A stretch of 64,000 nucleotides of DNA from Octopus sinensis. Its lineage: Eukaryota. Made by a program: the position numbers and the translations under genes. Below the pieces are notes generated by a model, which was given only the letters and a program-made list of their open reading frames with translations, was not told where the DNA came from and searched no databases. Position 1 is the first letter of the stretch, and the number at the start of each line of letters is the position of its first letter. Positions 5,035-64,000 of this stretch are shown piece after piece. The stretch lies in the NCBI RefSeq assembly GCF_006345805.1, contig NC_043011.1:51286464-51350463 (forward strand), read 5' to 3'.

Positions 5035-5436
5035 AATTGCTGCGTGGTAAGAAACTTGTTTCCCAACCACATGGTTATGGGTTCAGACCCACTGCGTGGA
5101 ACTTTGTACAAGTGTCTTCTACTGTAGCCAAGCAAAACCTTGTGAGTGTATTTGGTAAATGGAAACTGATGGAAGCCTGTCGTATATATATATATATGTA
5201 TATGTCTATGTGTGTGTGAGACTATGTCTGTGCTTGTCCCCCCTCTCACCACTGACAACCAGTGTTGGTGTGTTTACATCCCCATAACTTAGCAGTTCAG
5301 CAAAAGAGTCTGATAGAGTAAGTACTAGGCTTAAAAATAAGTCCTGCAATCGATTTGTTCAACTAAGACCACCCTCATGGTGGTGCTCCAGCATGGCCGC
5401 AGTCAAATGACTGAAACAAGTAAAAGAATAAAAGAA
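5035..5436 (+). mobile_element. tRNA-derived SINE, family A (near full length)
   Basis: A/B-box-like head (GTGGTAAGAAAC...GGGTTCAGACCC), body, internal (TA/TG)n and tail ...ACTGAAACAAGTAAAAGAATAAAAG. Related copies or pieces at ~4780-4975(-), 8845-9420(+), 16550-16880(+), 22530-22700(+), 26270-26400(-), 48590-48730(-), 51695-52035(+), 54620-55013(-), 58325-58470(+), 59955-60110(+). Confidence 0.8.
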
Positions 5437-15680: not shown

Positions 15681-17000
15681 ATATTGTTGAGTCGATTGCC
15701 AGTTTTTTCTTACCATGTAGTGATATGAAAAACTGCAGCATTCATAATCCTTTTCAGAAGTTCAGAGGCAGATAAGATGGAGGGATAAAGCTAGACTCAA
15801 ACTTGGATTCCACTTCAGATATCCAAGGACTGGGTGGTACTATTAAACTGAGTAACAAATTATATCTAGCATTCAATAACAGAAACAATTCTCCCTCTTA
15901 TATACATATTCCTTCAAGCAAATTTCCCCTCATGGTTGTCATTAATCACCCTAAAATTTGAACAGAATCAATTTTAATCTAAACAAGCAAAACTGCGTGT
16001 GGTGTGTGTGTGTGTGTGTGTGTGTGTGATGTGTGTGTGTTTGCATGCATGTGTGTGTGTGTGTGAAAGTGAATGGCCTGGTGGTTAGGGTGTTACACTT
16101 ACAATTGCAAGATTTTGGTCTCATCTCTTGGACTGGTGGTGCATTGTGTTCTGAAGCAAACTGCTTCAGCTGTTAATCAGTAGCCATTCGGTGGACTGGC
16201 CGTCCATTTAGGGGGCAATGTTGGTCTGTCCACCAGTATGCATGGTGACATCATTCAAAGGCCACAACAATGTGACCAGCAGTGTGCAACAACATCTGAT
16301 AGTTTGGTCAATACAATGTATTTGTGAGTGTGTGTGTGTGTGTGTGTGTGCGTGTGCGTGTGTGTTGTTGACCTTATGTAGTTATCTGCATTTTTATTGA
16401 GGAAATCTCAAACACATTTCCTTATTTGGGTGGTGGTAGTGGTGGTGGTGGTGCTGCTGGGGGTGGTGCTTGAATAAACATTAATGAATACTTTGTCTTC
16501 ATGTTTCATGTCAAAGATCTAATGCGAGGTGGTATAGTAGACAAGCCATTGCTCTCCAGCTGCAGGGTAAGAAGCTTGCTTCTCAATCACATGGTTCTAG
16601 GTTCAGTCCCACTGTGTGACACCATGGGCAAGAGTCTTCTACTATAGCCTTGTGAGTGGATTTGGTAGACAGTAACTGAAAGAAATCCATCATATAAATA
16701 TATATATATATATTTATTTATGTGCATGCGTCTGTGTTTGTCCCCCCTCCACCATCACTTGACAACTGCTGCTAGTGTGTTTACATCCCCAATAATTGAG
16801 CAGTTTGGCAAAAGAGACCGATAGAATAGGTACAAGGCTTACAAAGAATAAGTCCTGGACTCAAAAATCTTTGACTAAAATCCTTTAAATCATACATATA
16901 TATACATATATAAATACACACACACACACACATATATATACACACACACATATCTATCTATCTATCTATCTACCTATATAACTATCTACCTATCTATCTA

Positions 17001-36910: not shown

Positions 36911-36956
36911 TCTAGACTGATGATGGGCAAGACCCAGAAACATGCATGTCTCTAGA
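36911..36956 (+). ncRNA. Intact type I hammerhead ribozyme motif
   Basis: TCTAGA-CTGATGA-TGGG(CAAGA)CCCA-GAAA-CATGCATG-TC|TCTAGA. 6-bp stem I, full core, 4-bp stem II, palindromic stem III (ACATGCATGT), GUC cleavage after 36950. Confidence 0.8.
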
Positions 36957-38986: not shown

Positions 38987-39829
38987 ACATTTTCTCATTC
39001 AATACAAAATGACATTTGACTAACTGTACTATTTTGTAAGTGTTTGTGTGTGTTGATGAGTTTATTCATATTTTTACAACAACACGGCCACCATTGTTTC
39101 AGCAAAGCGTATATTCTTCGCTAAGCCTCTTCAGAAAAGTTATGCTAATAACTGCTGACTAACAACATTACCAGATCAGAACCATATATATATATATTTA
39201 TATATATATACATACATACATACATGCATGCATGCGTACATACATATACATACATACATACCCAGTCATATGTATGTATGTATGTACACATATACATATA
39301 TACAATTGTGTATATACATAAGCATTTTTTTTTGTTTTTCATTTTCAATAGTTAACATGGACGGATATATATAACAATTTCTAAGATAACACTTTACTGA
39401 TAGATTCTGAACACAATGGGGTTATTAATATCATTAATATCAAGCAAGGTATGAACACCACATATTCCCATTTCTCCTTCCATTAAAGAACTTGAAGGCC
39501 TCTTGTCTAAAACGGACAACTGAGTAAAGTATGAATGTTGTTTGATCTCATTCTAGTCATCTATCAAATTTATGGCTCTGTCATATAAATTATCTTGTCA
39601 TCATCATCATCATCATCATCATTATCCTTATCATTCTCAACCTCATCATCATCATTAGTGTTATTTTTTGTTGTTGTTGCCTATTTCAGACAAAGCAATA
39701 ATGATGTTATTTCATGGCTAGACATCAACCAAATGTGGCAGGTGAAAAGTTATATACAATATTATATGATACAGGAAACTATCATAGTGACAGCCACTCT
39801 TGAAAACTAGCCAGTCCACTACTCTACAA

Positions 39830-40410: not shown

Positions 40411-42416
40411 TAGGAGGATATGTTTTATCTTATATTTTTACATAGACATAAATCTCCAAACTTACAGGGAAGGTGTTTAATGGGAAGTTGTGATGTTCAT
40501 GGCTATTGTCCTTGTGAAAAATGTATGAAGCTCACAACATCTGACATCTGTGGTTATAAAGAGATGCGGCAGACAAGAACATAAAGTATTCACTTGGCTC
40601 TTGGTCTTTCAGCAAAGTTGTGAATTCATATCACCCTAAAGGCATTGAATTGTATTCTTAGGCAAGAGTTTTCAGTCTGTTTTGCTCTGCAGTGAGGGTC
40701 ATTTGTATATTAAACTACATTCAGTTTCATATATTAACTTTGGTTAATATATCTAATGCAAAGAGCATTAAAAGAATTAACTAGATGTAATTATGCAGTG
40801 AGAGGGGGAAAAAATGAACTTTTAGCCAAAGACAACTCTTGACATGTTTTGGGCTTATTATAACCTCATCAGTGGAACATAATTTTCATCATACTTGCCA
40901 AAGTGATAAAAACAGTCATGTAATAAAGCCTCTGTCACCAATAATGTGTGATGTATTCAATACAAAAGAACTATTTCATGGTGAATATTGTTACAACAAT
41001 GACGGATTTTGGGAATAGTTTGCAAACATTAACTTTTTTTTTCTTTATCACAATAGAGATGGGTCTGATAGGTAGATATGTAGGTTAAGAGACATCAGAG
41101 ACAAGTTGAGCGGGGGGGGGGGTAGTAAATGACAAAATGAAAGATAAACCTGAGGGAGCTTAAGAAAGTGTGTGTGTATGTGTGTTTAAGTATGTGGAGA
41201 TAAAACACACACACACGCATATATATATGTATATATACACACACATATACAGACATGCAAAAATGACAGGAAAAGATGGAAAAATAGTAAATGGGAGAAT
41301 GACTGAAAGGAAGAGACAAAGAGGAAGAGTGAGAGGGAGAGAATGTGCGATAGATGATAGATAGAGATATATATAGAGAGAGTGAGATAGACAGATAGAT
41401 AGAGATAGATAGATAGATAGAGAGAAGAAGAGAGAGAGTGAGAGAGTAAAATGTTCTAAAATATCATCGAATTGTGTTAGCAATTGAATTTCACAAGTAA
41501 GCTGGTGTACCACTTTCTTCCTTTTTTTTTCAGAACCACTTTATCATTATTATTATTATTATTATGATCATCATCATCATTATAATTATTACTGTCATTA
41601 TTTATGAGCAAGAAAAGAGAGGGGAGAACTGAAAACAATGTGCACACATACATATACACTCACCCTTCTCTCATTTTCTCCTTCTCCTGTCTCTTACAAA
41701 CCAAAACATTTTCCAACATTGAGTAGCCACATCACATCTTTATCAAGAATTTAAATAATTAAATAAATAAATTTTTGAAAAAATCTCAAGTTAACTCCTC
41801 CCCTCTGTCACACACAAATAACAGCAACAGTACAAATACAACATCGCACTGCATCATATCTGCTAGATGAATAAAAATTGAGTTGCGATTCTTCCCATAT
41901 TTTAGAATTATGAGCTCCTCTCTCACATTTAGTTCAGTGACTGAAAATATTTAAAAACTATCAAAATCAACCAGCTGGAACCAAAGGAATCAAAATAAAT
42001 CACTGTTTTACACACACATACATACATATCTTCTCATGCACTGACACGCACACAAACACATGTATAGATATATGTAGGATTGCTTTTATTGTTGTTGGGC
42101 ATACTGGAGCACTGCCTTTGGGCATACAGTTGATTACGCAAAAACAACCCAATTCCCACCCCACATTTATTGACCTTGGTAGGATGAAAGGCAAAGCCCT
42201 CTTGGGTAAGATTTGAACTCAGAACAGAAAGACATGTAAGCAGATACCACAAACTATTTTGTCCAATGCTCTCTCTCTCTATCTTTCTCTACACACACAC
42301 ACTCATTAGTAACTACTGTTTCAATGAAATAAATTATTTGTTGCCTTATAAAGTCTGCTACATGCATTGAGTACTTATTAACTTGCAACTATATATATAT
42401 ATATAATATATATATA

Positions 42417-42615
42417 CTTTATTTAAAGCAGTAGAAAATTCAACAAAACCTGTTACTCTAAGTTTCCCGTTGCCGTTCATCGGACAGTTTTTGCAACGGG
42501 AAACTCAGAGTAACAGGTTTTGTTGAATTTTCTGCTGCTTTAAATAAACATATTACTCTACCACTGGTATTTGAGTACTCTTTTTTCCACCTTGTTTCAC
42601 ATTTATGTGTTTACT
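42417..42615. repeat. Foldback element, truncated relative of the 49471 palindrome
   Basis: Left arm 42417-42494 and shortened right arm 42493-42548 are inverted copies; the same unique tail (TACTCTACCACTGGTATTTGAGTAC...) follows. Confidence 0.85.
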
Positions 42616-42763
42616 CTGGTATATATATATATATACTTATACACACACATACACATATATACATACACACACACACACACACATACGTATCAAGTCCTAT
42701 GCACAAGACTCTTGACCTTTGAGTCTCTTTGCAACTTCTGCTGGTTATATACATATATCTTTA

Positions 42764-42801
<38 letters not shown>

Positions 42802-42856
42802 AAGGAAAGAATAGAGTGAAAAGGAAGAGGGAGAATGATTTGACAGCTGTTTAATG

Positions 42857-42968
42857 ACCACTACATATGTTTCGATATAACATAGATCCACATATATACA
42901 GGACTTAAATTTAAATTAAGCAACAGTTTACCTGTATAATAGGACCTAGTTGTATCTCCTCAGGTGAT
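42857..42968 (-). ncRNA. Type I hammerhead ribozyme motif with large structured loop II (copy 1)
   Basis: Minus: ATCAC-CTGAGGA-GATA(C)AAC...GTT(A)TATC-GAAA-CATATG-TA|GTGGT. Stem I has one G.U pair, stem II opens with canonical G-C, stem III is palindromic, triplet GUA. Confidence 0.7.
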
Positions 42969-43100
42969 ATAAAATCACTGTCTCCTAGAATTGGTAGTAT
43001 ACCATAAATACTGCTGGGTATCTAAGGTTAACAAGCTCTGTTTTGTACTCTAATATGTTCTTAACGGAATACACCTCAACTATATATATATACTTTTTTC

Positions 43101-43178
<78 letters not shown>

Positions 43179-43872
43179 TACATACCCACACACACACAAA
43201 CATACACACAAACTTATATATTTTATCAGAAGCTTCATCTAATCATTACCTAGAGTTTCATATTGCTGATTATTCAATTGATCACATTAAGGATACACCA
43301 TGACAACAAATAATCAAATACAAAATGACATCGAAATATGATTGGTCACAATCAAATTACTATAACTTGAAAGATGGTCACATGTCAAAAAAAAAAAAAA
43401 ATCAGTTATTCCATTAGCCCTAAAACTTCATTTCCAATAATTACCTTCTTTGCTTTGGTATGTTTTAAAAAATAATATTGAAGACATGAAAATATCACAT
43501 GGTTATTTTTTGCATATGAATAGGCGACTGAGAGATGAATTTTGCTTCTTTATTTTTGCTTTTTGGCAATCTATCAAATCTTGATGACTAATCATATTTT
43601 CATGTGTTTATGAATTTTTTTTCTTATATATTGTCATGGTGCTTCTTCCCTTACTTCAGTTGTTTGAATATTTGGTGACATGAAACTCAGAATACACAGT
43701 TCAAGAGGCTTCGGTTTCTAAGAAGATATACTAACTCTAAGTTATGTATTGAGTAAATAAACATTTATCAAGCCAGACACACACACACCACATACGTATC
43801 AAGTCCTATGCACAAGACTCTTGACCTTTGAGTCTCTTTGCAACTTCTGCTGGTTATATACATATATCTTTA

Positions 43873-43923
<51 letters not shown>

Positions 43924-43975
43924 GAAAGAATAGAGTGAAAAGGAAGAGGGAGAATGATTTGACAGCTGTTTAATG

Positions 43976-44087
43976 ACCACTACATATGTTTCGATATAAC
44001 ATAGATCCACATATATACAGGACTTAAATTTAAATTAAGCAACAGTTTACCTGTATAATAGGACCTAGTTGTATCTCCTCAGGTGAT
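43976..44087 (-). ncRNA. Type I hammerhead ribozyme motif with large loop II (copy 2)
   Basis: Identical to 42857-42968, offset 1119 nt. Confidence 0.65.
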
Positions 44088-44219
44088 ATAAAATCACTGT
44101 CTCCTAGAATTGGTAGTATACCATAAATACTGCTGGGTATCTAAGGTTAACAAGCTCTGTTTTGTACTCTAATATGTTCTTAACGGAATACACCTCAACT
44201 ATATATATATACTTTTTTC

Positions 44220-44288
<69 letters not shown>

Positions 44289-44925
44289 TACATACCCACA
44301 CACACACAAACATACACACAAACTTATATATTTTATCAGAAGCTTCATCTAATCATTACCTAGAGTTTCATATTGCTGATTATTCAATTGATCACATTAA
44401 GGATACACCATGACAACAAATAATCAATACAAAATGACATCGAAATATGATTGGTCACAATCAAATTACTATAACTTGAAAGATGGTCACATGTCAAAAA
44501 AAAAAAAAAATCAGTTATTCCATTAGCCCTAAAACTTCATTCCAATAATTACCTTCTTTGCTTTGGTATGTTTTAAAAAATAATATTGAAGACATGAAAA
44601 TATCACATGGTTATTTTTTGCATATGAATAGCGACTGAGAGATGAATTTTGCTTCTTTATTTTTGCTTTTTGGTAATCTATCAAATCTTGATGACTAATC
44701 ATATTTTCATGTGTTTATGAATTTTTTTTCTTATATATTGTCATGGTGCTTCTTCCCTTACTTCAGTTGTTTGAATATTTGGTGACATGAAACTCAGAAT
44801 ACACAGTTCAAGAGGCTTCGGTTTCTAAGAAGATATACTAACTCTAAGTTATGTATTGAGTAAATAAACATTTATCAAGCCAGACACACACACACACACA
44901 CATGTACATACATACATAAATATAT

Positions 44926-47880: not shown

Positions 47881-48005
47881 TCAAGCATTTTCTTGTTTCA
47901 GTTTCTTGATGGTATTCTTCAACGCTTGTCTCTTGTTGCAGAACCACACACGAATCACTTCGCGGTCATAGTTCAAGTTTTCAGAAAGCTCTGTCATCTC
48001 AGCAC
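47881..48005 (-). CDS. POU6F2: Class VI POU gene, last coding exon (homeodomain helices 2-3, stop)
   Basis: Acceptor ...cttctacttcacag|GT (phase 1); encodes (G)AEMTELSENLNYDREVIRVWFCNKRQALKNTIKKLKQENA*; TGA at 47883-47881. WFCNKRQ is characteristic of class VI. Missed by the ORF track. Confidence 0.95.
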
Positions 48006-48199
48006 CTGTGAAGTAGAAGAGAAAAGAAATTTCAATTCATTTACTTAATTTTACGTGTTTCAGTCATTGCCTTCCAAGTTTATATTTTTGGTAATCATTC
48101 ATTGTTTTACATCCATTTTTCCATGCTAGCATGGGTTAGGCAAATATGTTATTGAGGCATTGTTTTACAGATGAACAGCTTTCTGATAATAACCCTTAA

Positions 48200-49439: not shown

Positions 49440-49470
<31 letters not shown>

Positions 49471-49471
<1 letters not shown>

Positions 49472-49725
49472 TGCTTTATTTAAAGCAGCAGAAAATTCAA
49501 CAAAACCTGTTACTCTGAGTTTCACGTTGCCGTTCATCGGACAGTTTTTGCTAGAATAGCAAAAACTGTCCGTAGCAAAAACTGTCCGATGAACGGCAAC
49601 GTGAAACTCAGAGTAACAGGTTTTGTTGAATTTTCTGCTGCTTTAAATAAAGCATATTACTCTACCACTGGTATTTGAGTACTCTTTTTTCCACCTTGTT
49701 TCACATTTATGTGTTTACTTACACG
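49471..49725. repeat. Perfect 83-bp inverted repeat (49471-49553 / 49573-49655) plus unique tail; each arm holds a hammerhead-like motif
   Basis: Arms are exact reverse complements; the 19-nt spacer contains a 16-nt duplicate of the arm start. Flanked on the left by (TA)n. Confidence 0.9.
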
Positions 49726-49781
49726 GTATATATATATCAACATCATCATCACTGTTTAATGACTACCTTCCATGGGCATGA

Positions 49782-50074: not shown

Positions 50075-51282
50075 CAAGGTGGTATCATCAAAAAGTTCCT
50101 GGACTAGTTCTGGAGTGTACCAATAGATGGCAGCACATGGTTGTGTGTGCAGGGAGAGCTAGCAGTGACCTTCATGAAGCAGTCTGCTGAGTGACACCAC
50201 TGTGTTTACTTTGCAAGTTGAGAAATTTGTGTTTTTGTGATCACGTGTATGCTGTGGTCTGTAATTTTTTTTCATGGACAGGAATAAAGGGCCAAAATGA
50301 AATTTTGCGTCAAACTTAGAAAGTCTGCTACAGAGATATGGAACATGCTTTGGCAAGCTTATGGTGACAAGGCAATGGGTCATATGCAATGTGTCAAGTG
50401 GCATGGGGGCTTCAAATGTGGAAGAATATCCCTGGAAGACAATGAGCTATCTGAAAGACCTGCCATGAGCATCACCTCTGGAAACATGGAGAAAATTCAT
50501 GAGTTTGTGCATGAGGATCATTGGAGGGCAATCAATAACATTGCTGCTTGCTGAGCACTGAGCAGAAAGAACATTGTCGCAAAGTCTGTCAAGATCCCTG
50601 GTAGTGTTCCACTGATGACCCATCCTTCGTGTTGAGGATCATCACCAGTGACGAGAGTTGGATCTGTGGGTACAACCCTGAAATGAAGCAGGTGTTGTCG
50701 CAATGGAAGAACCCTTCATCTCTATGACCAAACAAGGCATGACAGAACTGCAGCTCAAAAGCATGCTCATTGTTTTTTTACAACATCCACGGTGTTGTGC
50801 ATTGAGAATTCATTTCCCATGGCCTGACTGTGATGTTTTAAAGCATTTGAAAGAAGACATTTGGCGGAAGCGACCAGATCTGTGGAGTGCGAAGAATTGG
50901 ATTCTTCATGATGACAACGTGCCTTGTCACTGAGCTCTCGCCACTCATGACTTTCTTGCCAAAACCAACCCAGTATCACTTCTGCACCCACCCTATTCAC
51001 CAGATTTAGCACCTGCAGACTTCCATCTGTTCCCAAGATGAAAATGTAGCTCAAAGATTGCCATTTTAACACCATTGCCGAAATCTTGAGTGAATTGCAG
51101 GAGGTCCTTGACTCACTTATGGAAAATGACTTCTGGGCTGGATTCCAAAAGTGGCAGGAATGCTGGTACTGGTGTATTGCTGTGCAGGGTTACTATTGCA
51201 AAGGAGATGATGTTAAAACTTATGTAATTAAGTTATTTTTTATGAAACAGAACTAGTCTGGAGACTTTTTGATACCACCTCA
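50075..51282 (+). mobile_element. Full-length decayed mariner (DD34D-type) transposon, ~1.2 kb
   Basis: TIRs CAAGGTGGTATC..AAAAAGTTCCTGGACTAGTTC / GAACTAGTCTGGAGACTTTTTGATACCACCTCA with TA flanks. Broken ORF includes MKFCVKLRKSATEIWNML..., WILHDDNVPCH and HPPYSPDLAPADFHLFP. Confidence 0.9.
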
Positions 51283-51660: not shown

Positions 51661-52224
51661 ATCGATTTCGATTCTTTTATAATATATAATAGGCATAGGA
51701 GTAGCTGTATGGTAAGTAGCTGCATGGCACCTTGGGCAAAGTGTCTTCTACCATAGCCTCGGGCCGACCAAAGCCTTGTGAGTGGGTTTGGTAGACGGAA
51801 ACTGAAAGAAACCCGTCGCATGTTTGTGTTTCTGTGTTTGTCCCTCCAACATCACTTGACAACCGATGCTGGTTTGTTTACATCCCTGTAAGCCTAGTAC
51901 TTATTCTATCGGCAAAAGGGACCGATAGAATAAGTACTAGGCTTACAAGAATAAGTCCTGGGGTTGCTTTGCTCAACTAAAGGCGGTGCTCCAACATAGC
52001 CACAGTCAAAATGGCTAAAACAAGTAAAAGAGTAAAAGATATATTGTATATTGATATATACACACACCATGCTGCACATAAAGTGCAAAACTCAGAGTAA
52101 TGACAGAGCTAAATCTTCAGTTTCTGATGAAAAATCTCTATTACACGTATTGAGTGCTTTTTCTCCAAAATCACTATGTTTATATGTATATGTATGTGTG
52201 CTTGTGAGTGTATACATATATGCA

Positions 52225-54586: not shown

Positions 54587-55245
54587 TTCTATATTTAAGA
54601 GATGAGGAATTTTGTACATTACTCTTTTACTCGTTTCAGTCATTTGACTGCAGCCATGCTGGAGCACCGCCTTTAGTCGAGCAAATCGACCCCGGGACTT
54701 ATTTTTTGTAAGCCCAGTACTTATTCTATCGGTCTCTTTTGCTGAACCGCTAAGTGATGGGGACATAAACATACCAGTATCGGTTGTCAAGCAATGCTAG
54801 GGAGACAAACACAGACACACAAACTCACACACATACACATACATATATACGATGGGCTTCTTTCAGTTTCCATCTACCAAATCCACTCACAAAGCTTTGG
54901 TCGGCCTAAGGCTATAGTAGAAAACACTTGCCCAAGGTGCCACGCAGTGGGACTGAACCCGGAATCATGTGGTTGGTAAACAAGCTACTTACCACACAGC
55001 CACTCCTGCGCCTATTTACATTCGACGGATATTTATCCTCATCTTGTTTGTTGTTAACACAACGTTTCGGCTGATATACCCTCCAGCCTTCTTCAGGTGT
55101 CTTGGGGAAATTTCGACCCTGAGTTCTCATTCCTAAGGTATTTTTCGATGTTATTATTATTATTGTTGTTATTGTTCAGGTCACTGCTTGGAATTGAACT
55201 CGGAATCTTGGGATTAGTAGCCCATGCTCTTAACCACTACGCCGG
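54587..55245 (-). mobile_element. Penelope-like terminal-repeat (pLTR) fragment with tRNA-like head and HHR, split by a family-A SINE (54620-55013)
   Basis: Matches 63316-63630 block for block; the end piece TCTATATTTAAGAGATG resumes on the far side of the SINE. Confidence 0.75.
55056..55101 (-). ncRNA. Minimal type I hammerhead motif (PLE type)
   Basis: Minus: GACAC-CTGAAGA-A-GGCTG(GAGGGTATAT)CAGCC-GAAA-CGTT|GTGTT. Palindromic AACGTT replaces helix III; GUU triplet; extra A after A9. Confidence 0.7.
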
Positions 55246-58493: not shown

Positions 58494-59485
58494 CAGGGGT
58501 TGGACAAAATAATGGAAACACCAAGCATCACAGCATCATAATTTTGAAATATCTATAAAACTGTCAAAGGCTTGTTTATTTTTATAGTTTTTGATTTATT
58601 ATTAGTGTTGCTTAATATGTTTTGCTAAAATTGCTGTTTCTTTTCAGATATCATCAGAAAGGGGTAATTAAAATTCATTAAACTGACAGATCTATCAGAC
58701 TTTCAAAGAGGTCAAATTGTTGGTGCTCGCATGGCAGGTGCCAGCGTAACAAAAACAGCCAAAATGTATGGTGTATCAAGTAGTACAGCCTTTGAGAAAG
58801 AGGGAGAAACCTCCTCATCAAAACAAAACTCTGGAAGAAAACCAAAGCTTTCAGATAGGGACCTTCAGTCTCTTGCACAAATTGTTAGAAAGGATCACAA
58901 AAGTACAGCTCCCAAAATTACTGCAGAGCTTAATGACCACCTTGAGAACCCAGTTTCCACAAAAACTGTTCACTGGGAGCTGCACAAAGCCAGATTTCAT
59001 GGGAGGGCTGCATTAAGAAAACCACTATTTTCAAAAACAAACGTTGCAAAGCATTTATAGTGGAGTAAAACCTACAGAATTGGTCCCTAGAGCAGTGGAA
59101 GAATGTTATTTTCTCGGACGAGTCATCTTTTACCTTTTTCTGACCACCGGCCAAGTATACGTGTGGAGACAGTCAAAAGAAGCATTTGACCCAGACTGCC
59201 TTCTTCCAACTGTTAAACATGGAGGAGGATCTGGGGGGGGGCTATATCTTGGAAATCTGCCAGCCCAATGGTTTCCTTTCATGGCAGAATTAATAGTCAA
59301 GACTATTTAAGCATTTTATCTGATCAAATTCATCCTATGGTTGTGGAACTATTTCCAGAGGGAAACGCAATCTTTCAGGATGATAATGCACCAATTCATA
59401 CAGCTAAAGTTGTTACTGAATAGCATGAAGAACATTCCAGTGAAGTTGAACATCTTATTTGGCTGCCACAGTCCCCAGATCTCAA
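58494..59485 (+). mobile_element. Tc1-family transposon, decayed and 3'-truncated at a SINE
   Basis: TA|CAGGGGTTGGACAAAATAATGGAAACACC TIR. Peptides GRKPKLSDRD...RKPL, LPTVKHGGGS, IFQDDNAPIHTAKVV and W(L)PQSPDLN; stops at the family-C SINE 59487-59950. Confidence 0.85.
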
Positions 59486-60369: not shown

Positions 60370-61688
60370 CTGGAACGATAAATTATATAGATATTTATAT
60401 ATCATGAAAATAGTAGTGGTAGTGATAGTAATCATGAAGATGATGGTGGTGATGATGACAATGATGATAATGGCAATGAGAGTGCCAGAGTGATGCTGAT
60501 GATGGTGATAAGAGTGATGATGAGGAGGATGTCAATGATGATGATGATGATAATGTTAGTGATGATGTAGTGTTGTGATGTAGCTGATGATGATGGTAAC
60601 GGTTATGACAATGACGATGACAACGATACTGAAGATAGTAATAAGAGTGGTGATAATACTGATATCAATGATAATGATGATTATAGTGTTGGTAATGACG
60701 TAGTGTTGTGATGTAACTCTTTCTGACGGTGATGGTAACAATTATGATAATGATGATGACAATGATGATGATGAGGGTGGTAGTAGTGGTGATGTGTGTG
60801 GGTATGTACACATGTACACACATACATGTATGTATGTGTATGTATGCATGTGCACAAGTATTTTTTAGACATGTTATATTGAAAATACAACCAAGTTATA
60901 ATTCAAACTATTTTATCAAGGTTTTTACCTCCCGTTTTTGAATGACTTCCTCACAACTCATTTGAACAATAACATTTCTAATCTATCATCAACATTTCTA
61001 GACTTTCACAGCCTCATCTTCAGGAGTTGAAGTGTGAAATGGTTTTTGGCATATGAAATTACCTCTTTTATGACAGGAAAATGTAATTTATGTACACTTT
61101 ATTGCTACACTAACCTACCATAAAAATGAGGTAGTTGCAAATGCCTATATTACATCAAACTCCAAATCCTGAAGATGAGTCTGTGAAAGTCTAGAAACAG
61201 AAATGGATTTAGGGACTTTATAGTTCCAAAAGAACTGCAAAACCTCATACAAAAAGAGTAAATAAATCTTTATGAAAATAGTTTAAAACTTGAACTTAAT
61301 TATGCTTTCAATATATCATCATCATCATCATCATTACCATCATCAATCAGTTTAACATCCAGTTTTCCATGCTTGCAAGGGTCAAATGAAATCTTTTTGA
61401 GTTTCAGAAAGATTCTTTTATCAGTGTTCACAATTATATTATAAAAAAAGCTAATGTGAGACAGTTCCAAATGAAAATGCTGATGGTATAGGTAAAGATG
61501 ATGATGATGATGATGATGGTAATGATGATGGTGGTAATGATATTGGTGGTGGTGATAGTGATGATGAAGATGAGGTTTTGTAGTGATGATGGTAATGGTG
61601 ATGGTGGTGGGATGATGTGTAATAAGTATTATGGAGTAACAAAAACTGCCCCCCCCCAAAAAAAAAACAAAAAAACATTTTCACGTAC

Positions 61689-62712
61689 TGGGTAAAAGTT
61701 GACTGACATTTGGAGGCAGCCCATCTGAGGTAGTTGTGTGGGTAGTGAGGGACTGCGCTGCCACTGTGATGCGAGTGGCTGTTTGCTGCTGTTGCGGCTG
61801 CTGGGAAACCGTCGTCTTGGCAATGGCATGATGCTGGGGGTGACCGACCAAGCTCCCAGCACCAGCAGTAACGAGGTTAGAATGAATGCTGCTGGAGTTG
61901 ATTGCTTGATGTGTACTGTTGTTATTGTTGCTGTTGTTACTGCTGCTGCTGCTGTTGTTGTTGCTGCTGTTGGTGATGATGCTGCTGCTGTTGTTACTGC
62001 TGCTGTTGTTGTTGTTGTTGTTGCTGCTGCTGGTGTTGTTGCTAGCACTGACTCCCGTTGTGGTCGTCCCTGTTGATCCCAGTAAGGGCCCAGTGCTGCT
62101 GCTGTTGTTGCTGCTGCTGTTACCACTGCTGCTGCTGCTGCTGCTGTTTCCTCGTAGAGTGCTGCTGCTGCTGATGTTGCTTGCTGCAACACTGTGCACC
62201 AAGCTGCTACTGATGCCATTGCTTGTGATACTACTACTATTATTGTTATTGTTGTTGCTGTTGTTGTTGTTGTTACTGCTGCTGTTGCTGTTGTTGCTGC
62301 CACCGCCACCACCACCGCTACCACCGCCACCACCACCACCACCACCACCACTGCTACCACCGCCACCGCCGCCGCCGCCACCACCAACGCTGCTGCTATT
62401 GCTACTGTGACCTCCACTGCCGCCACTGCTGCCACCATTGCTACTGCTACTACTGCTGCTGCTGCTGCTTATGATGATGCTGTTATTGCTGCCATTTGTC
62501 GAGCTGTTGCCCACACCATTGCTGCTGCAGTTGCTGCTGCTGCTGCTGCTAGCAGTGGCAGCAGCAACAACAGCAGCAGTACTGTGTGCCTGGTTCTGTT
62601 GGTTGAGATGGTTGCAGCCTCCATTGGTGGTGGCATTGTTCACAGGTTGTTGGCCAGACAAGTTGGAGGTTGTCGAATTCACATGTGGGACAGAAACAGG
62701 TGTTAACACTTG
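61689..62712 (-). CDS. POU6F2: Class VI POU gene: large low-complexity (S/N/G/Q/T-rich) exon
   Basis: Acceptor ttctttctgtatttcag|CAA (phase 0); open for 341 codons plus 1 nt; donor CCC A|gtacgt (phase 1) fits the next exon's phase. There is no recognisable domain, so boundaries rest on splice signals only. Confidence 0.7.
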
Positions 62713-63260
62713 CTGAAATACAGAAAGAATTTGAGAAATAAGCAGAGGAATATGGTGAAAGTACAAGGAGTATAGAGACAAAACAACTGGTAAAGCAGTA
62801 ATGTAAGAATATTGTACTAAATATTCAAGTACCAAGGAACTCCATCTGGTTTGCCCAATGTAAGCTATGGGTGCATAAAAGGTGCAGAAGAAACATATGT
62901 AGGCCAACAGAGAAGATAGACAGTCAATGTGACAGATGCACAAAAGTAGTTGACAGTAAGAAGCCTCAGTGAAAGAAATTGAGCGCTTGGAAGCCCCCGT
63001 AGAAGTAAAGCACAGTAGCCAAAATACAAATGGGGTAGAAGAAAATTTAGGGTGTTATAACCTCTGATGGTAACAAAGGTGTTCTCTTTTCAAGTGAAGA
63101 GTAGACTGTACAAAGTTTGTGTATGAAGTCAATGTTGGCAAGCAAAACTTAGGTATTGAATGAAGAGGATTATGAAGGCCATGTGCATGTGTGTCACCCT
63201 GTGTGCACACACATGCATGTGTGCATACACATATGTGTAAGCATATAGCTATGTGGTGTC

Positions 63261-63315: not shown

Positions 63316-63519
63316 TTCTATATTTAAGAGATGTTACATTATTTACATTAGTTACATTTGATGGATATTTGTCCTCATCTTGTTTGCTGCTAACACATTT
63401 CGGCTGATATACCCTCCAGCCTTCATTAGGTGTCTTGGGGAAATTTCAAATCTGGGTTCTCATTCCTGAGTTATTTTTCAATGTTGTTGTTGCTGTTGTT
63501 ATTGTTATTGTTATTGTTG

Positions 63520-63561
<42 letters not shown>

Positions 63562-64000
63562 TCACTGCCTGGAATCAAATTTGGAATCTTGGGGTTAGTA
63601 GCCCGCACACTTAACCACTATGCCATATGCTTGCGGGCAATTATGGAGTGAATTTTAGGGCTTGTAAATCTAATATTTTCTTATCCTTCCTTAATACTGG
63701 TTCCCATATTCTATTCATATCTGCATTCGGTCTGCTTAGGAGGTTGTTGTGTCCTAGCATATGTGCTGCTTCTTTTAGTTTTCGTATTTTCCAGTGGTGT
63801 TCTCTGTCTATTATTTTAACTTCATCCCACAAGGTGAGGTGGTCTCCATTTTTCCATACATGATCAGCTATACCTGATTTATTAATATCTCCTCGTGTCA
63901 CAGCTTTGCGATGTTCATCTACCCTTATTTTGAGGGGGGGGGGCGACATGTTTCGCCTTTGTATAACCTACCACAGCTGCATGGGATGGAGTACACATAG
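63316..64000 (-). mobile_element. Penelope-like element 3' end: GIY-YIG endonuclease plus pLTR (runs off window end)
   Basis: Minus: YVYSIPCSCGRLYKGETCRP (frameshift in poly-C) LKIRVDEHRKAV...SGIADHVWK...WDEVKIIDRE...RKLKEAAHM, stop at 63641. Then a tRNA-like segment (63557-63630), (AAY)n and a decayed HHR (63392-63434). Confidence 0.85.

What the first reader, a model, noticed from the sequence alone, without database searches (positions are those of the whole stretch)
42857..42968. Canonical hammerhead core split by an ~80-nt structured loop II, sense to the POU6 transcript
Core, G-C stem II opening, palindromic ACAUAUGU and GUA site are intact. The insert has its own helices (CCTGTATA/TATACAGG, CTTAA/TTAAG, TAGG/CCTA). 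It lies ~4-5 kb past the stop codon on the gene's strand, so a long 3' UTR or readthrough RNA would contain it. Precedent exists in the discontinuous HHR of rodent Clec2 3' UTRs; any regulatory role here is inference.
Basis: partly seen in the sequence, partly recalled or inferred. Interest (0 to 1): 0.75.

Follow-up and report, generated by a model that had tools for sequence, protein, structure and literature searches.

The report
Orphan long-stem hammerhead motif, tandem copy
A complete hammerhead-ribozyme core wrapped round an 83-base hairpin really is there, once in each copy of a just-duplicated 1.1 kb non-coding segment of a hammerhead-rich (probably octopus) genome, but it looks like a retroelement-style or accidental motif, not a switch on the POU6 gene.

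Summary
On the minus strand, 42968..42857 reads AUCAC|CUGAGGA|G…83-nt hairpin…C|GAAA|CAUAUG|UA|GUGGU. [quoted passage not shown]

New facts:
- An identical second copy lies at 44087..43976. The motif sits in a 1.1 kb unit that is tandemly duplicated between (CA)n tracts, and the two units differ by one substitution.
- The window also holds a compact type I hammerhead (36911-36956, plus strand) and a Penelope-style minimal hammerhead (55101..55056, minus strand).
- Chance expectation is about 0.01 per window for the bare descriptor. It is at most 1e-3 when G-C closure is required, and lower still with a palindromic helix III.
- Two copies are predicted to fold into a classical double hammerhead.

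Against it, an 83-nt helix II has no natural precedent that I found. No relatives, covariation or orthologous conservation could be found. The motif starts 4.9 kb past the POU6 stop, beyond 14 poly(A) hexamers. The Clec2 precedent has a different topology.

Verdict: probably an atypical retroelement-style, dimer-dependent hammerhead (0.45), possibly a chance motif (0.35). A POU6 3'UTR regulatory role is unsupported (about 0.05).

The parts
42857..42968 (-). Hammerhead-like motif, copy A (type I topology). Helix I 42968-42964 / 42861-42857; core CUGAGGA 42963-42957; helix II 42956-42874; GAAA 42873-42870; helix III plus loop 42870-42863; H17 = A42862, predicted cut 42862|42861.
42874..42956 (-). 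83-nt helix II domain. A long imperfect hairpin with an inner CUUAA/UUAAG hairpin, closed by G10.1-C11.1.
   Evidence: -24.8 kcal/mol, z = -5.0, 0 of 200 shuffles as stable
43976..44087 (-). Hammerhead-like motif, copy B, base-for-base identical to copy A. Predicted cut 43981|43980, which is 1,119 nt upstream of the copy A cut on the minus-strand RNA.
42667..43792 (.). Tandem unit A (about 1.1 kb, non-coding, longest stop-to-stop frame free of microsatellite is 47 codons). It starts and ends in (CA)n.
43777..44900 (.). Tandem unit B. It differs from unit A by 1 substitution plus microsatellite and homopolymer indels.
42964..42978 (-). Competing local hairpin GUGAU-UUUAU-AUCAC. It can sequester the 5' strand of helix I.
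   Evidence: it appears in the MFE of the 185-nt context
47881..48009 (-). Last coding exon of the POU class 6 gene (C-terminal half of the homeodomain). The stop codon is at 47883-47881. Given for reference.

Best explanation
This is an orphan, atypical type I hammerhead of the invertebrate retroelement style. It has a complete catalytic core, a short helix I, and a 2-bp helix III capped by a palindromic tetraloop, which is too weak to act alone. Its helix II is expanded into an 83-nt hairpin. One copy sits in each unit of a very recent 1.1 kb non-coding tandem dimer bordered by (CA)n microsatellites, in a genome whose repeats carry hammerheads.

Inferred mechanism: on a minus-strand transcript spanning both units, the two ACAUAUGU segments pair into an 8-bp intermolecular-type helix III and the helix I strands swap. 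This gives a double hammerhead like those of newt satellite and ASBVd RNAs. Cleavage after A43981 and A42862 would release a 1,119-nt RNA with 5'-OH and 2',3'-cyclic phosphate ends, which a tRNA ligase could circularise, as in a retrozyme.

The usual loop 1-loop 2 contact is missing, so I expect low activity at physiological Mg2+. I see no reason to think it regulates POU6.

Shown: sequence, helices, duplication, statistics and the predicted dimer fold. Inferred: descent from a retroelement hammerhead, transcription, cleavage and circularisation.
For: - All core positions, G10.1-C11.1, A15.1-U16.1 and H17 are present.
- Chance expectation is 0.007-0.013 per window. It drops to 1e-3 or less with G-C closure, and to about 3e-5 (0 of 4000 shuffles) with a palindromic helix III as well. 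The true core ranks first of 540 decoy cores.
- A helix III of 1-2 bp with a palindromic 2-4 nt loop, dimer-dependent action and tandem arrangement are the published hallmarks of metazoan type I hammerheads (PMC4209133; PMC7229834).
- The cofold MFE of two copies is exactly the double hammerhead, 10.6 kcal/mol better than two monomers.
- The hammerhead-competent monomer fold costs only +2.6 kcal/mol over the MFE. The compact hammerhead at 36.9 kb costs +2.7.
- The window holds other hammerheads: a type I at 36911-36956 (+), a Penelope-style minimal one at 55101..55056 (-), and a degenerate copy of the latter next to a GIY-YIG-like ORF remnant.
- Helix III here (ACAU-AUGU) differs from that of the 36.9 kb hammerhead (ACAU-GC-AUGU) only by the central GC.
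- Penelope-like elements insert into microsatellites and form partial tandems (PMC8557442).
- The required C11.1-G12 CpG is kept in a genome with CpG observed/expected of 0.28.
Against: - An 83-nt helix II lies outside every natural metazoan hammerhead family in the papers I read, where it is 4-8 bp. The canonical loop 1-loop 2 contact cannot form.
- There is no sequence similarity to the two hammerhead-bearing repeat families in the window.
- The unit has no other copy in the window.
- A search with ORF translations of the unit found no relative in 5.8 billion proteins. Two metagenome scans also found none.
- There is no covariation evidence. The two copies are identical over the motif and differ by 1 substitution per 1.1 kb. 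They count as one observation, and the duplication could even be an assembly artefact or plain unequal crossing-over between (CA)n tracts.
- Monomer size is 1.1 kb, against 150-450 bp for described animal retrozymes.
- ACATATGT is over-represented here (9 observed, 2.2 expected), so the palindrome criterion is weaker than the shuffles imply.
- An alternative hairpin competes for the 5' strand of helix I.
- Rfam gives no hammerhead hit, although it also misses the compact hammerhead at 36.9 kb.
Confidence: 0.45

Rival explanations
1. Chance motif. The real, stable feature is an AT-rich 83-nt hairpin in ordinary intergenic DNA. CUGAGGA and GAAA happen to flank it, and ACATATGT is a common by-product of CA/TA microsatellite sequence. 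The 1.1 kb duplication arose by unequal exchange or slippage between (CA)n tracts, or in assembly, and merely copied the coincidence. There is no biological cleavage, though a weak in vitro reaction would not be surprising because any complete core with three helices can cleave.
For: - The bare descriptor is expected about 0.01 times per 64 kb, which means hundreds of hits in a gigabase genome.
- ACATATGT is four-fold over-represented.
- The duplication borders lie in (CA)n, and the copies differ by 1 substitution.
- No relatives, family or conservation were found.
- The helix II length has no precedent among described families, and a competing hairpin exists.
Against: - With the features the literature treats as diagnostic (G10.1-C11.1 and a palindromic helix III), the expectation falls to between 3e-5 and 1e-3 per window.
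- The motif also falls inside the only large tandem duplication found in the stretch compared (40-48 kb against the whole window; 3.5% of the window), which is the arrangement dimer-type hammerheads need.
- The genome demonstrably carries retroelement hammerheads nearby.
- The dimer MFE is a textbook double hammerhead.
Confidence: 0.35
2. One reading: a cis-regulatory hammerhead in a long POU6 3'UTR or read-through RNA. It would cut the transcript and so control 3'-end formation or stability, as proposed for Clec2.
For: The motif is on the same strand as POU6 and downstream of the stop. The core is complete. A precedent exists for 3'UTR hammerheads (PMC6155905).
Against: - Copy B lies 3.8 kb and copy A 4.9 kb past the stop, beyond 14 canonical poly(A) hexamers, the first at 174 nt. 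Long microsatellites also intervene.
- The motif sits in a duplication that is essentially new (1 substitution), so it cannot be an old conserved regulator in this form.
- The POU6 loci of available relatives show no alignable 3' flank and no downstream hammerhead.
- Clec2 has a different topology: type III with a large helix I.
Confidence: 0.05
3. The hairpin itself is the functional or mobile unit, for example a miRNA-like precursor or a tiny foldback or MITE-like element. On this reading the hammerhead reading is irrelevant.
For: The 83-nt hairpin is far more stable than shuffles (z = -5.0) and has pre-miRNA-like dimensions. Foldback repeats occur next door at 42390-42630.
Against: - No Rfam miRNA or other family covers it at E up to 10.
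- There is no other copy in the window.
- No terminal duplications are evident.
- AT-rich hairpins are common in such DNA.
- This reading does not explain the exact core on both flanks.
Confidence: 0.1

Closest known systems
Double (dimeric) type I hammerheads of newt satellite 2 transcripts and ASBVd
   Same: Type I topology. Helix III is too short to hold alone and has a palindromic loop. Two tandem copies on one RNA pair to make an extended helix III with swapped helix I. This is predicted here as the MFE of two copies (PMC4209133, PMC6155905).
   Different: In those RNAs helix II is short and capped by a loop that contacts helix I, and the monomers are about 250-350 nt and highly repeated. 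Here helix II is 83 nt, the spacing is 1,119 nt, and only two copies are seen.
Animal non-LTR retrozymes (tandem repeats with type I hammerheads that give circRNAs; Cervera and de la Pena 2020)
   Same: Low-GC non-coding tandem repeat with one sense hammerhead per unit. Invertebrate-style helix III of 2 bp plus a tetraloop. Dimers are an accepted array size. Penelope-like elements, the presumed mobilisers, are present in the window.
   Different: Described monomers are 150-450 bp and multi-copy, with helix I about 6 bp and helix II about 4 bp. Here the unit is 1.1 kb, full of microsatellites and apparently low-copy. No circRNA evidence is available.
Penelope-like element minimal hammerheads, and the 'HHR_half_core' cases of Naiad elements
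   Same: Short helix I (4-5 bp), a larger-than-usual helix II and palindromic 15.x/16.x positions. Craig et al. 2021 list eight cases with the two core halves 35-50 nt apart. The microsatellite-flanked tandem arrangement is also shared.
   Different: There is no RT or GIY-YIG ORF in or next to the unit. The unpaired base between A9 and 10.1 is absent. There is no homology to the window's own minimal-hammerhead repeat. The core halves are 83 nt apart.
Discontinuous hammerhead of Clec2 3'UTRs (Martick et al. 2008)
   Same: A hammerhead core interrupted by a long insert, lying downstream of a coding region on the sense strand.
   Different: Clec2 is type III and the long element is helix I (150-1500 nt; PMC6155905). 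It lies inside a documented 3'UTR and is shared by several mammals. Here the topology is type I, the long element is helix II, UTR membership is undocumented, and no conservation was found.

Membership tests
Hammerhead ribozyme (general) | Conserved core: C3 U4 G5 A6 N7 G8 A9, G12 A13 A14, A15.1-U16.1, H17 not G | tested here: met
   CUGAGGA ... GAAA ... U A in both copies
Hammerhead ribozyme (general) | Three helices radiating from the core, with G10.1-C11.1 closing helix II | tested here: met
   Helix I is 5 bp with one G.U. Helix II is 4 bp, then a C.A mismatch, then 3 bp, continuing into the long hairpin. Helix III is 2 bp. The constrained fold costs +2.6 kcal/mol over the MFE.
Hammerhead ribozyme (general) | Loop 1-loop 2 tertiary contact of natural, physiologically fast hammerheads | tested here: not met
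   No capping loop 4-6 bp from the core. Helix II runs on for 83 nt. Whether an internal mismatch could substitute is unknown.
Hammerhead ribozyme (general) | Match to the Rfam hammerhead covariance models | tested here: inconclusive
   No hit at gathering score or at E up to 10. The same search also misses the compact type I hammerhead at 36911-36956.
Hammerhead ribozyme (general) | Site-specific self-cleavage | not testable with these tools
   Needs in vitro transcription of monomer and dimer constructs.
Metazoan type I hammerhead / non-LTR retrozyme | Helix III of 1-2 bp capped by a palindromic 2-4 nt loop (dimer-dependent) | tested here: met
   A-U and C-G pairs plus an AUAU loop give the 8-nt palindrome ACAUAUGU. 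The dimer MFE is a double hammerhead (PMC4209133, PMC7229834).
Metazoan type I hammerhead / non-LTR retrozyme | Tandem repeats of 150-450 bp monomers, multi-copy in the genome | tested here: inconclusive
   A tandem dimer is present, but the unit is 1.1 kb. No further copy was found in the window or in the searchable collections. The genome itself could not be searched.
Metazoan type I hammerhead / non-LTR retrozyme | Expression as linear and circular monomer RNA | not testable with these tools
   No transcript data are available.
Penelope-like element minimal hammerhead | Lies in the pseudo-LTR of an element encoding RT and GIY-YIG endonuclease, or is homologous to such a repeat | tested here: not met
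   No ORF longer than 47 codons outside microsatellite in the unit. No similarity to the window's minimal-hammerhead repeat at 55.1 and 63.4 kb.
Clec2-type discontinuous 3'UTR hammerhead | Type III topology with the long insert in helix I | tested here: not met
   The open helix is helix I (type I) and the insert is in helix II (PMC6155905).
Clec2-type discontinuous 3'UTR hammerhead | Inside the mRNA 3'UTR and conserved among orthologues | tested here: inconclusive
   The motif starts 4.9 kb past the stop, with 14 poly(A) hexamers before it. The relatives fetched are too distant: only exons align, and none has a downstream hammerhead.

The most novel reading that the evidence does not exclude
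A previously undescribed hammerhead variant in a cephalopod. Its helix II is a roughly 80-nt structured domain, and it works as a double hammerhead between two 1.1 kb tandem units. It would excise a 1.1 kb linear or circular RNA from POU6 read-through or independent transcripts. That would make it a large, microsatellite-bearing retrozyme-like element, or a newly born ribozyme caught just after duplication.
Probability: 0.12. Interest if true: 0.65.

Novelty: new variant of a known kind. Interest (0 to 1): 0.35.

Why it matters
If the motif cleaves, it would widen the accepted architecture of natural hammerheads, since current descriptors cap helix II at a few base pairs and would never find it. 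It would also show that retrozyme-like units can be over 1 kb in animals. And it would give an example of a dimer-dependent ribozyme made potentially active by a very recent tandem duplication.

If it does not cleave, it is a useful calibration point. In hammerhead-rich, microsatellite-rich genomes, a complete core with three helices can turn up without function. In that case helix III palindromy built from CA/TA repeats should not be over-weighted.

Either way it gives no present reason to think POU6 is ribozyme-regulated.

Tried and rejected
- **Rfam.** The whole window at gathering score, and 42700-43100 at E up to 10, gave no hammerhead. I rejected this as evidence because the compact hammerhead at 36.9 kb is also missed.
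- **Homology to other hammerhead repeats in the window.** Local alignment of the candidate and about 150 nt of flank on each side (42700-43100) against the 36.9, 55.1 and 63.4 kb regions matched only microsatellite.
- **Orthologous-locus conservation.** Two protein searches with POU6 exons and five contig look-ups gave loci L001-L015. Only exons align, at 74-88% DNA identity, with no 3' flank and no downstream hammerhead.
- **Other copies in public data.** The exact 22-mer found nothing in metagenome contigs. The pattern core plus 65-95 nt plus CGAAACATATGTA gave one hit with no helix I complementarity, apparently chance. Concatenated ORF translations of the unit gave no protein hit at E up to 10. 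All of these have low power.
- **Naming the source organism.** A paper search for the SRA run numbers found nothing. A SINE-like sequence that I recall from octopus genomes occurs four times in the window. That identification rests on my memory only.
- **Pfam on the GIY-YIG-like ORF remnant.** No significant family.
- **Whole-motif folding z-scores.** The 131-nt and 185-nt contexts gave -1.3 and -1.7. This is not significant, so only the helix II hairpin stands out thermodynamically.
- **The hammerhead-like hit at 39134..39075 (-).** It has G.U at 10.1/11.1, a UUUU/AAAA helix I and a wobble-rich helix III, so I judged it chance.

Full report
**What is there.** Read on the minus strand, window 42968..42857 is AUCAC CUGAGGA G-AUA-C-AAC…GUU-A-UAU-C GAAA C-AUAU-G U A GUGGU. 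A hammerhead descriptor written for this check places C3 at 42963, G12 at 42873, U16.1 at 42863 and H17 = A at 42862. Helix I is 5 bp (one G.U), helix II is 4 bp and then continues, and helix III is 2 bp. The 83 nt between G10.1 (42956) and C11.1 (42874) fold into one long imperfect hairpin with an inner CUUAA/UUAAG hairpin. That hairpin folds to -24.8 kcal/mol with z = -5.0, and none of 200 shuffles is as stable.

The motif is present twice. Window 42667-43792 and 43777-44900 are a head-to-tail duplication of a 1.1 kb unit. The second motif, at 44087..43976, is identical base for base. Over the whole unit the copies differ by one substitution plus length changes in microsatellites and homopolymers. 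The duplication starts, joins and ends in (CA)n tracts. It is therefore either very recent or an assembly artefact, and the two motifs count as one observation. The unit has no coding capacity: the longest frame outside microsatellite is 47 codons. The two predicted cut sites are 1,119 nt apart.

**Is it more than chance?** I used three nulls.
- Dinucleotide shuffles in 2 kb blocks give 0.0095-0.013 hits per window for helices as found (helix II span up to 110). Requiring G10.1-C11.1 gives 0.00075, requiring a palindromic helix III gives 0.00075, and requiring both gives none in 4000 shuffles.
- 540 decoy core pairs of the same composition, run on the real sequence with the second copy masked, average 0.007 hits. 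The true core ranks first.
- I counted core-free junction scaffolds of the same geometry in the real sequence and multiplied by the observed frequencies of CTGANGA and GAA. This expects 1.3e-3 with G-C closure and about 3e-5 if helix III must also be palindromic.

One caveat applies. ACATATGT occurs 9 times against 2.2 expected, because CA/TA microsatellites generate it. So the motif is unexpected for one window but reachable by chance across a gigabase genome searched with a loose descriptor.

**Context: a hammerhead-rich genome.** The same descriptor finds a compact type I hammerhead on the plus strand at 36911-36956: UCUAGA CUGAUGA UGGG-CAAGA-CCCA GAAA CAUGCAUG U C UCUAGA. Its helix I continues past an internal loop. 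A relaxed search finds a Penelope-style minimal hammerhead at 55101..55056 (-): GACAC CUGAAGA A GGCUGG…CAGCC GAAA CG UU GUGUU. It has the bulged base after A9, a 5-6 bp helix II and an ACGU palindrome, as described by Cervera and de la Pena. A degenerate copy of that repeat (63434..63392) lies about 200 nt downstream of an ORF remnant whose start reads like a GIY-YIG motif, although Pfam does not confirm this. Rfam reports none of these motifs, so its silence on the candidate carries no weight. The candidate shares no sequence with either family beyond the core. However, its helix III (ACAU-AUGU) differs from that of the 36.9 kb hammerhead (ACAU-GC-AUGU) only by the central GC.

**How it would work.** Published work defines the usual animal type I hammerhead as helix I about 6 bp and helix II about 4 bp, with helix III of 1-2 bp capped by a palindromic 2-4 nt loop. 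It is inactive alone and active as a dimer when a second copy lies on the same RNA. It is typically found in tandem repeats (non-LTR retrozymes) or in the pseudo-LTRs of Penelope-like elements (PMC4209133; PMC7229834). The candidate has exactly that helix III and exactly that tandem arrangement.

Folding two copies together gives, as the minimum-energy structure, an 8-bp helix III between the copies with swapped helix I strands and both helix II hairpins intact. This is a classical double hammerhead, 10.6 kcal/mol better than two monomers. The monomeric hammerhead fold costs +2.6 kcal/mol over the MFE, the same penalty as for the compact 36.9 kb hammerhead (+2.7). A local hairpin, GUGAU/AUCAC, competes for the 5' strand of helix I. 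If a minus-strand RNA spans both units, cleavage at both sites would free a 1,119-nt RNA with the end chemistry that tRNA ligase circularises. All of this is inference from structure prediction and from the literature.

**What speaks against a genuine ribozyme element.**
- Helix II of 83 nt is far outside the 4-8 bp seen in described families. The nearest mention is eight Naiad cases with core halves 35-50 nt apart, which their authors flagged only as 'half cores' (PMC8557442).
- The loop-loop contact needed for fast cleavage at cellular Mg2+ has no obvious equivalent.
- The unit is 1.1 kb and full of microsatellites, against 150-450 bp for animal retrozymes.
- No other copy exists in the window, and none was found in the collections I could search. 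Those searches have little power, and the source genome itself was not available.
- The duplication borders in (CA)n fit ordinary unequal exchange as well as the microsatellite preference of Penelope-like elements.

**The POU6 idea.** The gene is a class 6 POU factor on the minus strand. One exon at about 56.8-57.0 kb encodes the end of the POU-specific domain and the start of the homeodomain. The last exon, at 48009-47881, ends …RVWFCNKRQALKNTIKKLKQENA-stop. The motif copies start 3.8 and 4.9 kb past the stop. Ten AATAAA and four ATTAAA hexamers precede copy A, the first at 174 nt, and long microsatellites lie between. The POU6 loci of the relatives I could fetch share only exons with the window, and none has a hammerhead on the gene strand within up to 10 kb (less on shorter contigs) downstream. 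The cited Clec2 ribozyme is type III with its large insert in helix I, not helix II (PMC6155905). A regulatory role is therefore possible only in the trivial sense that read-through RNA would contain the motif.

**Verdict.** I put about 0.1 on the hairpin itself being the relevant unit and 0.05 on POU6 regulation. If real, it is a new variant of a known kind. Interest is moderate to low until cleavage or a sequence family is shown.

Noticed in passing
window 36911-36956 (+): Compact, canonical-looking type I hammerhead: UCUAGA|CUGAUGA|UGGG-CAAGA-CCCA|GAAA|CAUGCAUG|U C|UCUAGA, predicted cut after C36950. Helix I continues (AGGCC/GGCCU) beyond an internal loop, and helix III is a 10-nt palindrome. 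It is single-copy in the window, antisense to POU6, and missed by Rfam even at E up to 10.
   Followed up: partly
window 55056-55101 (-): Penelope-style minimal hammerhead with an intact core, a bulged A after A9, a 5-6 bp helix II and an ACGU palindrome. It lies inside a POU6 intron and is sense to the gene, so the pre-mRNA would contain it.
   Followed up: partly
window 63392-64000 (-): ORF remnant with a GIY-YIG-like start (YSIPCSCGRLYKGET, frameshifted at a C-run) running off the window end. It is followed by a tRNA-like stretch, an (AAT)n tract and a degenerate copy (CUAAUGA … GAAAUG) of the 55.1 kb minimal-hammerhead repeat. This is probably the 3' end of a Penelope-like element. Pfam gave no significant hit.
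   Followed up: partly
window 39075-39134 (-): Weak hammerhead-like hit: CUGAAGA … GAAA … GUA, with G.U at 10.1/11.1, a UUUU/AAAA helix I and a wobble-rich 9-bp helix III. Probably chance.
   Followed up: partly
window 5138-5168, 16648-16678, 51774-51804 (+); 54864-54894 (-): Four copies of a SINE-like sequence that I recall from octopus genomes. Together with 34% GC, CpG observed/expected of 0.28 and dense TA/CA/GA microsatellites, this suggests an octopod cephalopod source. The identification rests on memory and was not verified with a tool.
   Followed up: partly
window 42390-42630 and 49445-49737: A foldback or MITE-like repeat, about 95% identical between the two places and with an internal inverted repeat at 42418-42548. 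It ends in a TA/CA microsatellite and directly abuts the left border of the 1.1 kb tandem duplication.
   Followed up: no
window 50297-50933 and 58731-59310 (+): Broken ORFs that look like mariner/Tc1-type transposase remnants in POU6 introns.
   Followed up: no
window 61681-62943 (-): Long low-complexity ORF (Ser/Asn/Gly/Thr runs) on the POU6 strand upstream of the POU domain exons. It is probably the N-terminal coding exon of the gene.
   Followed up: no
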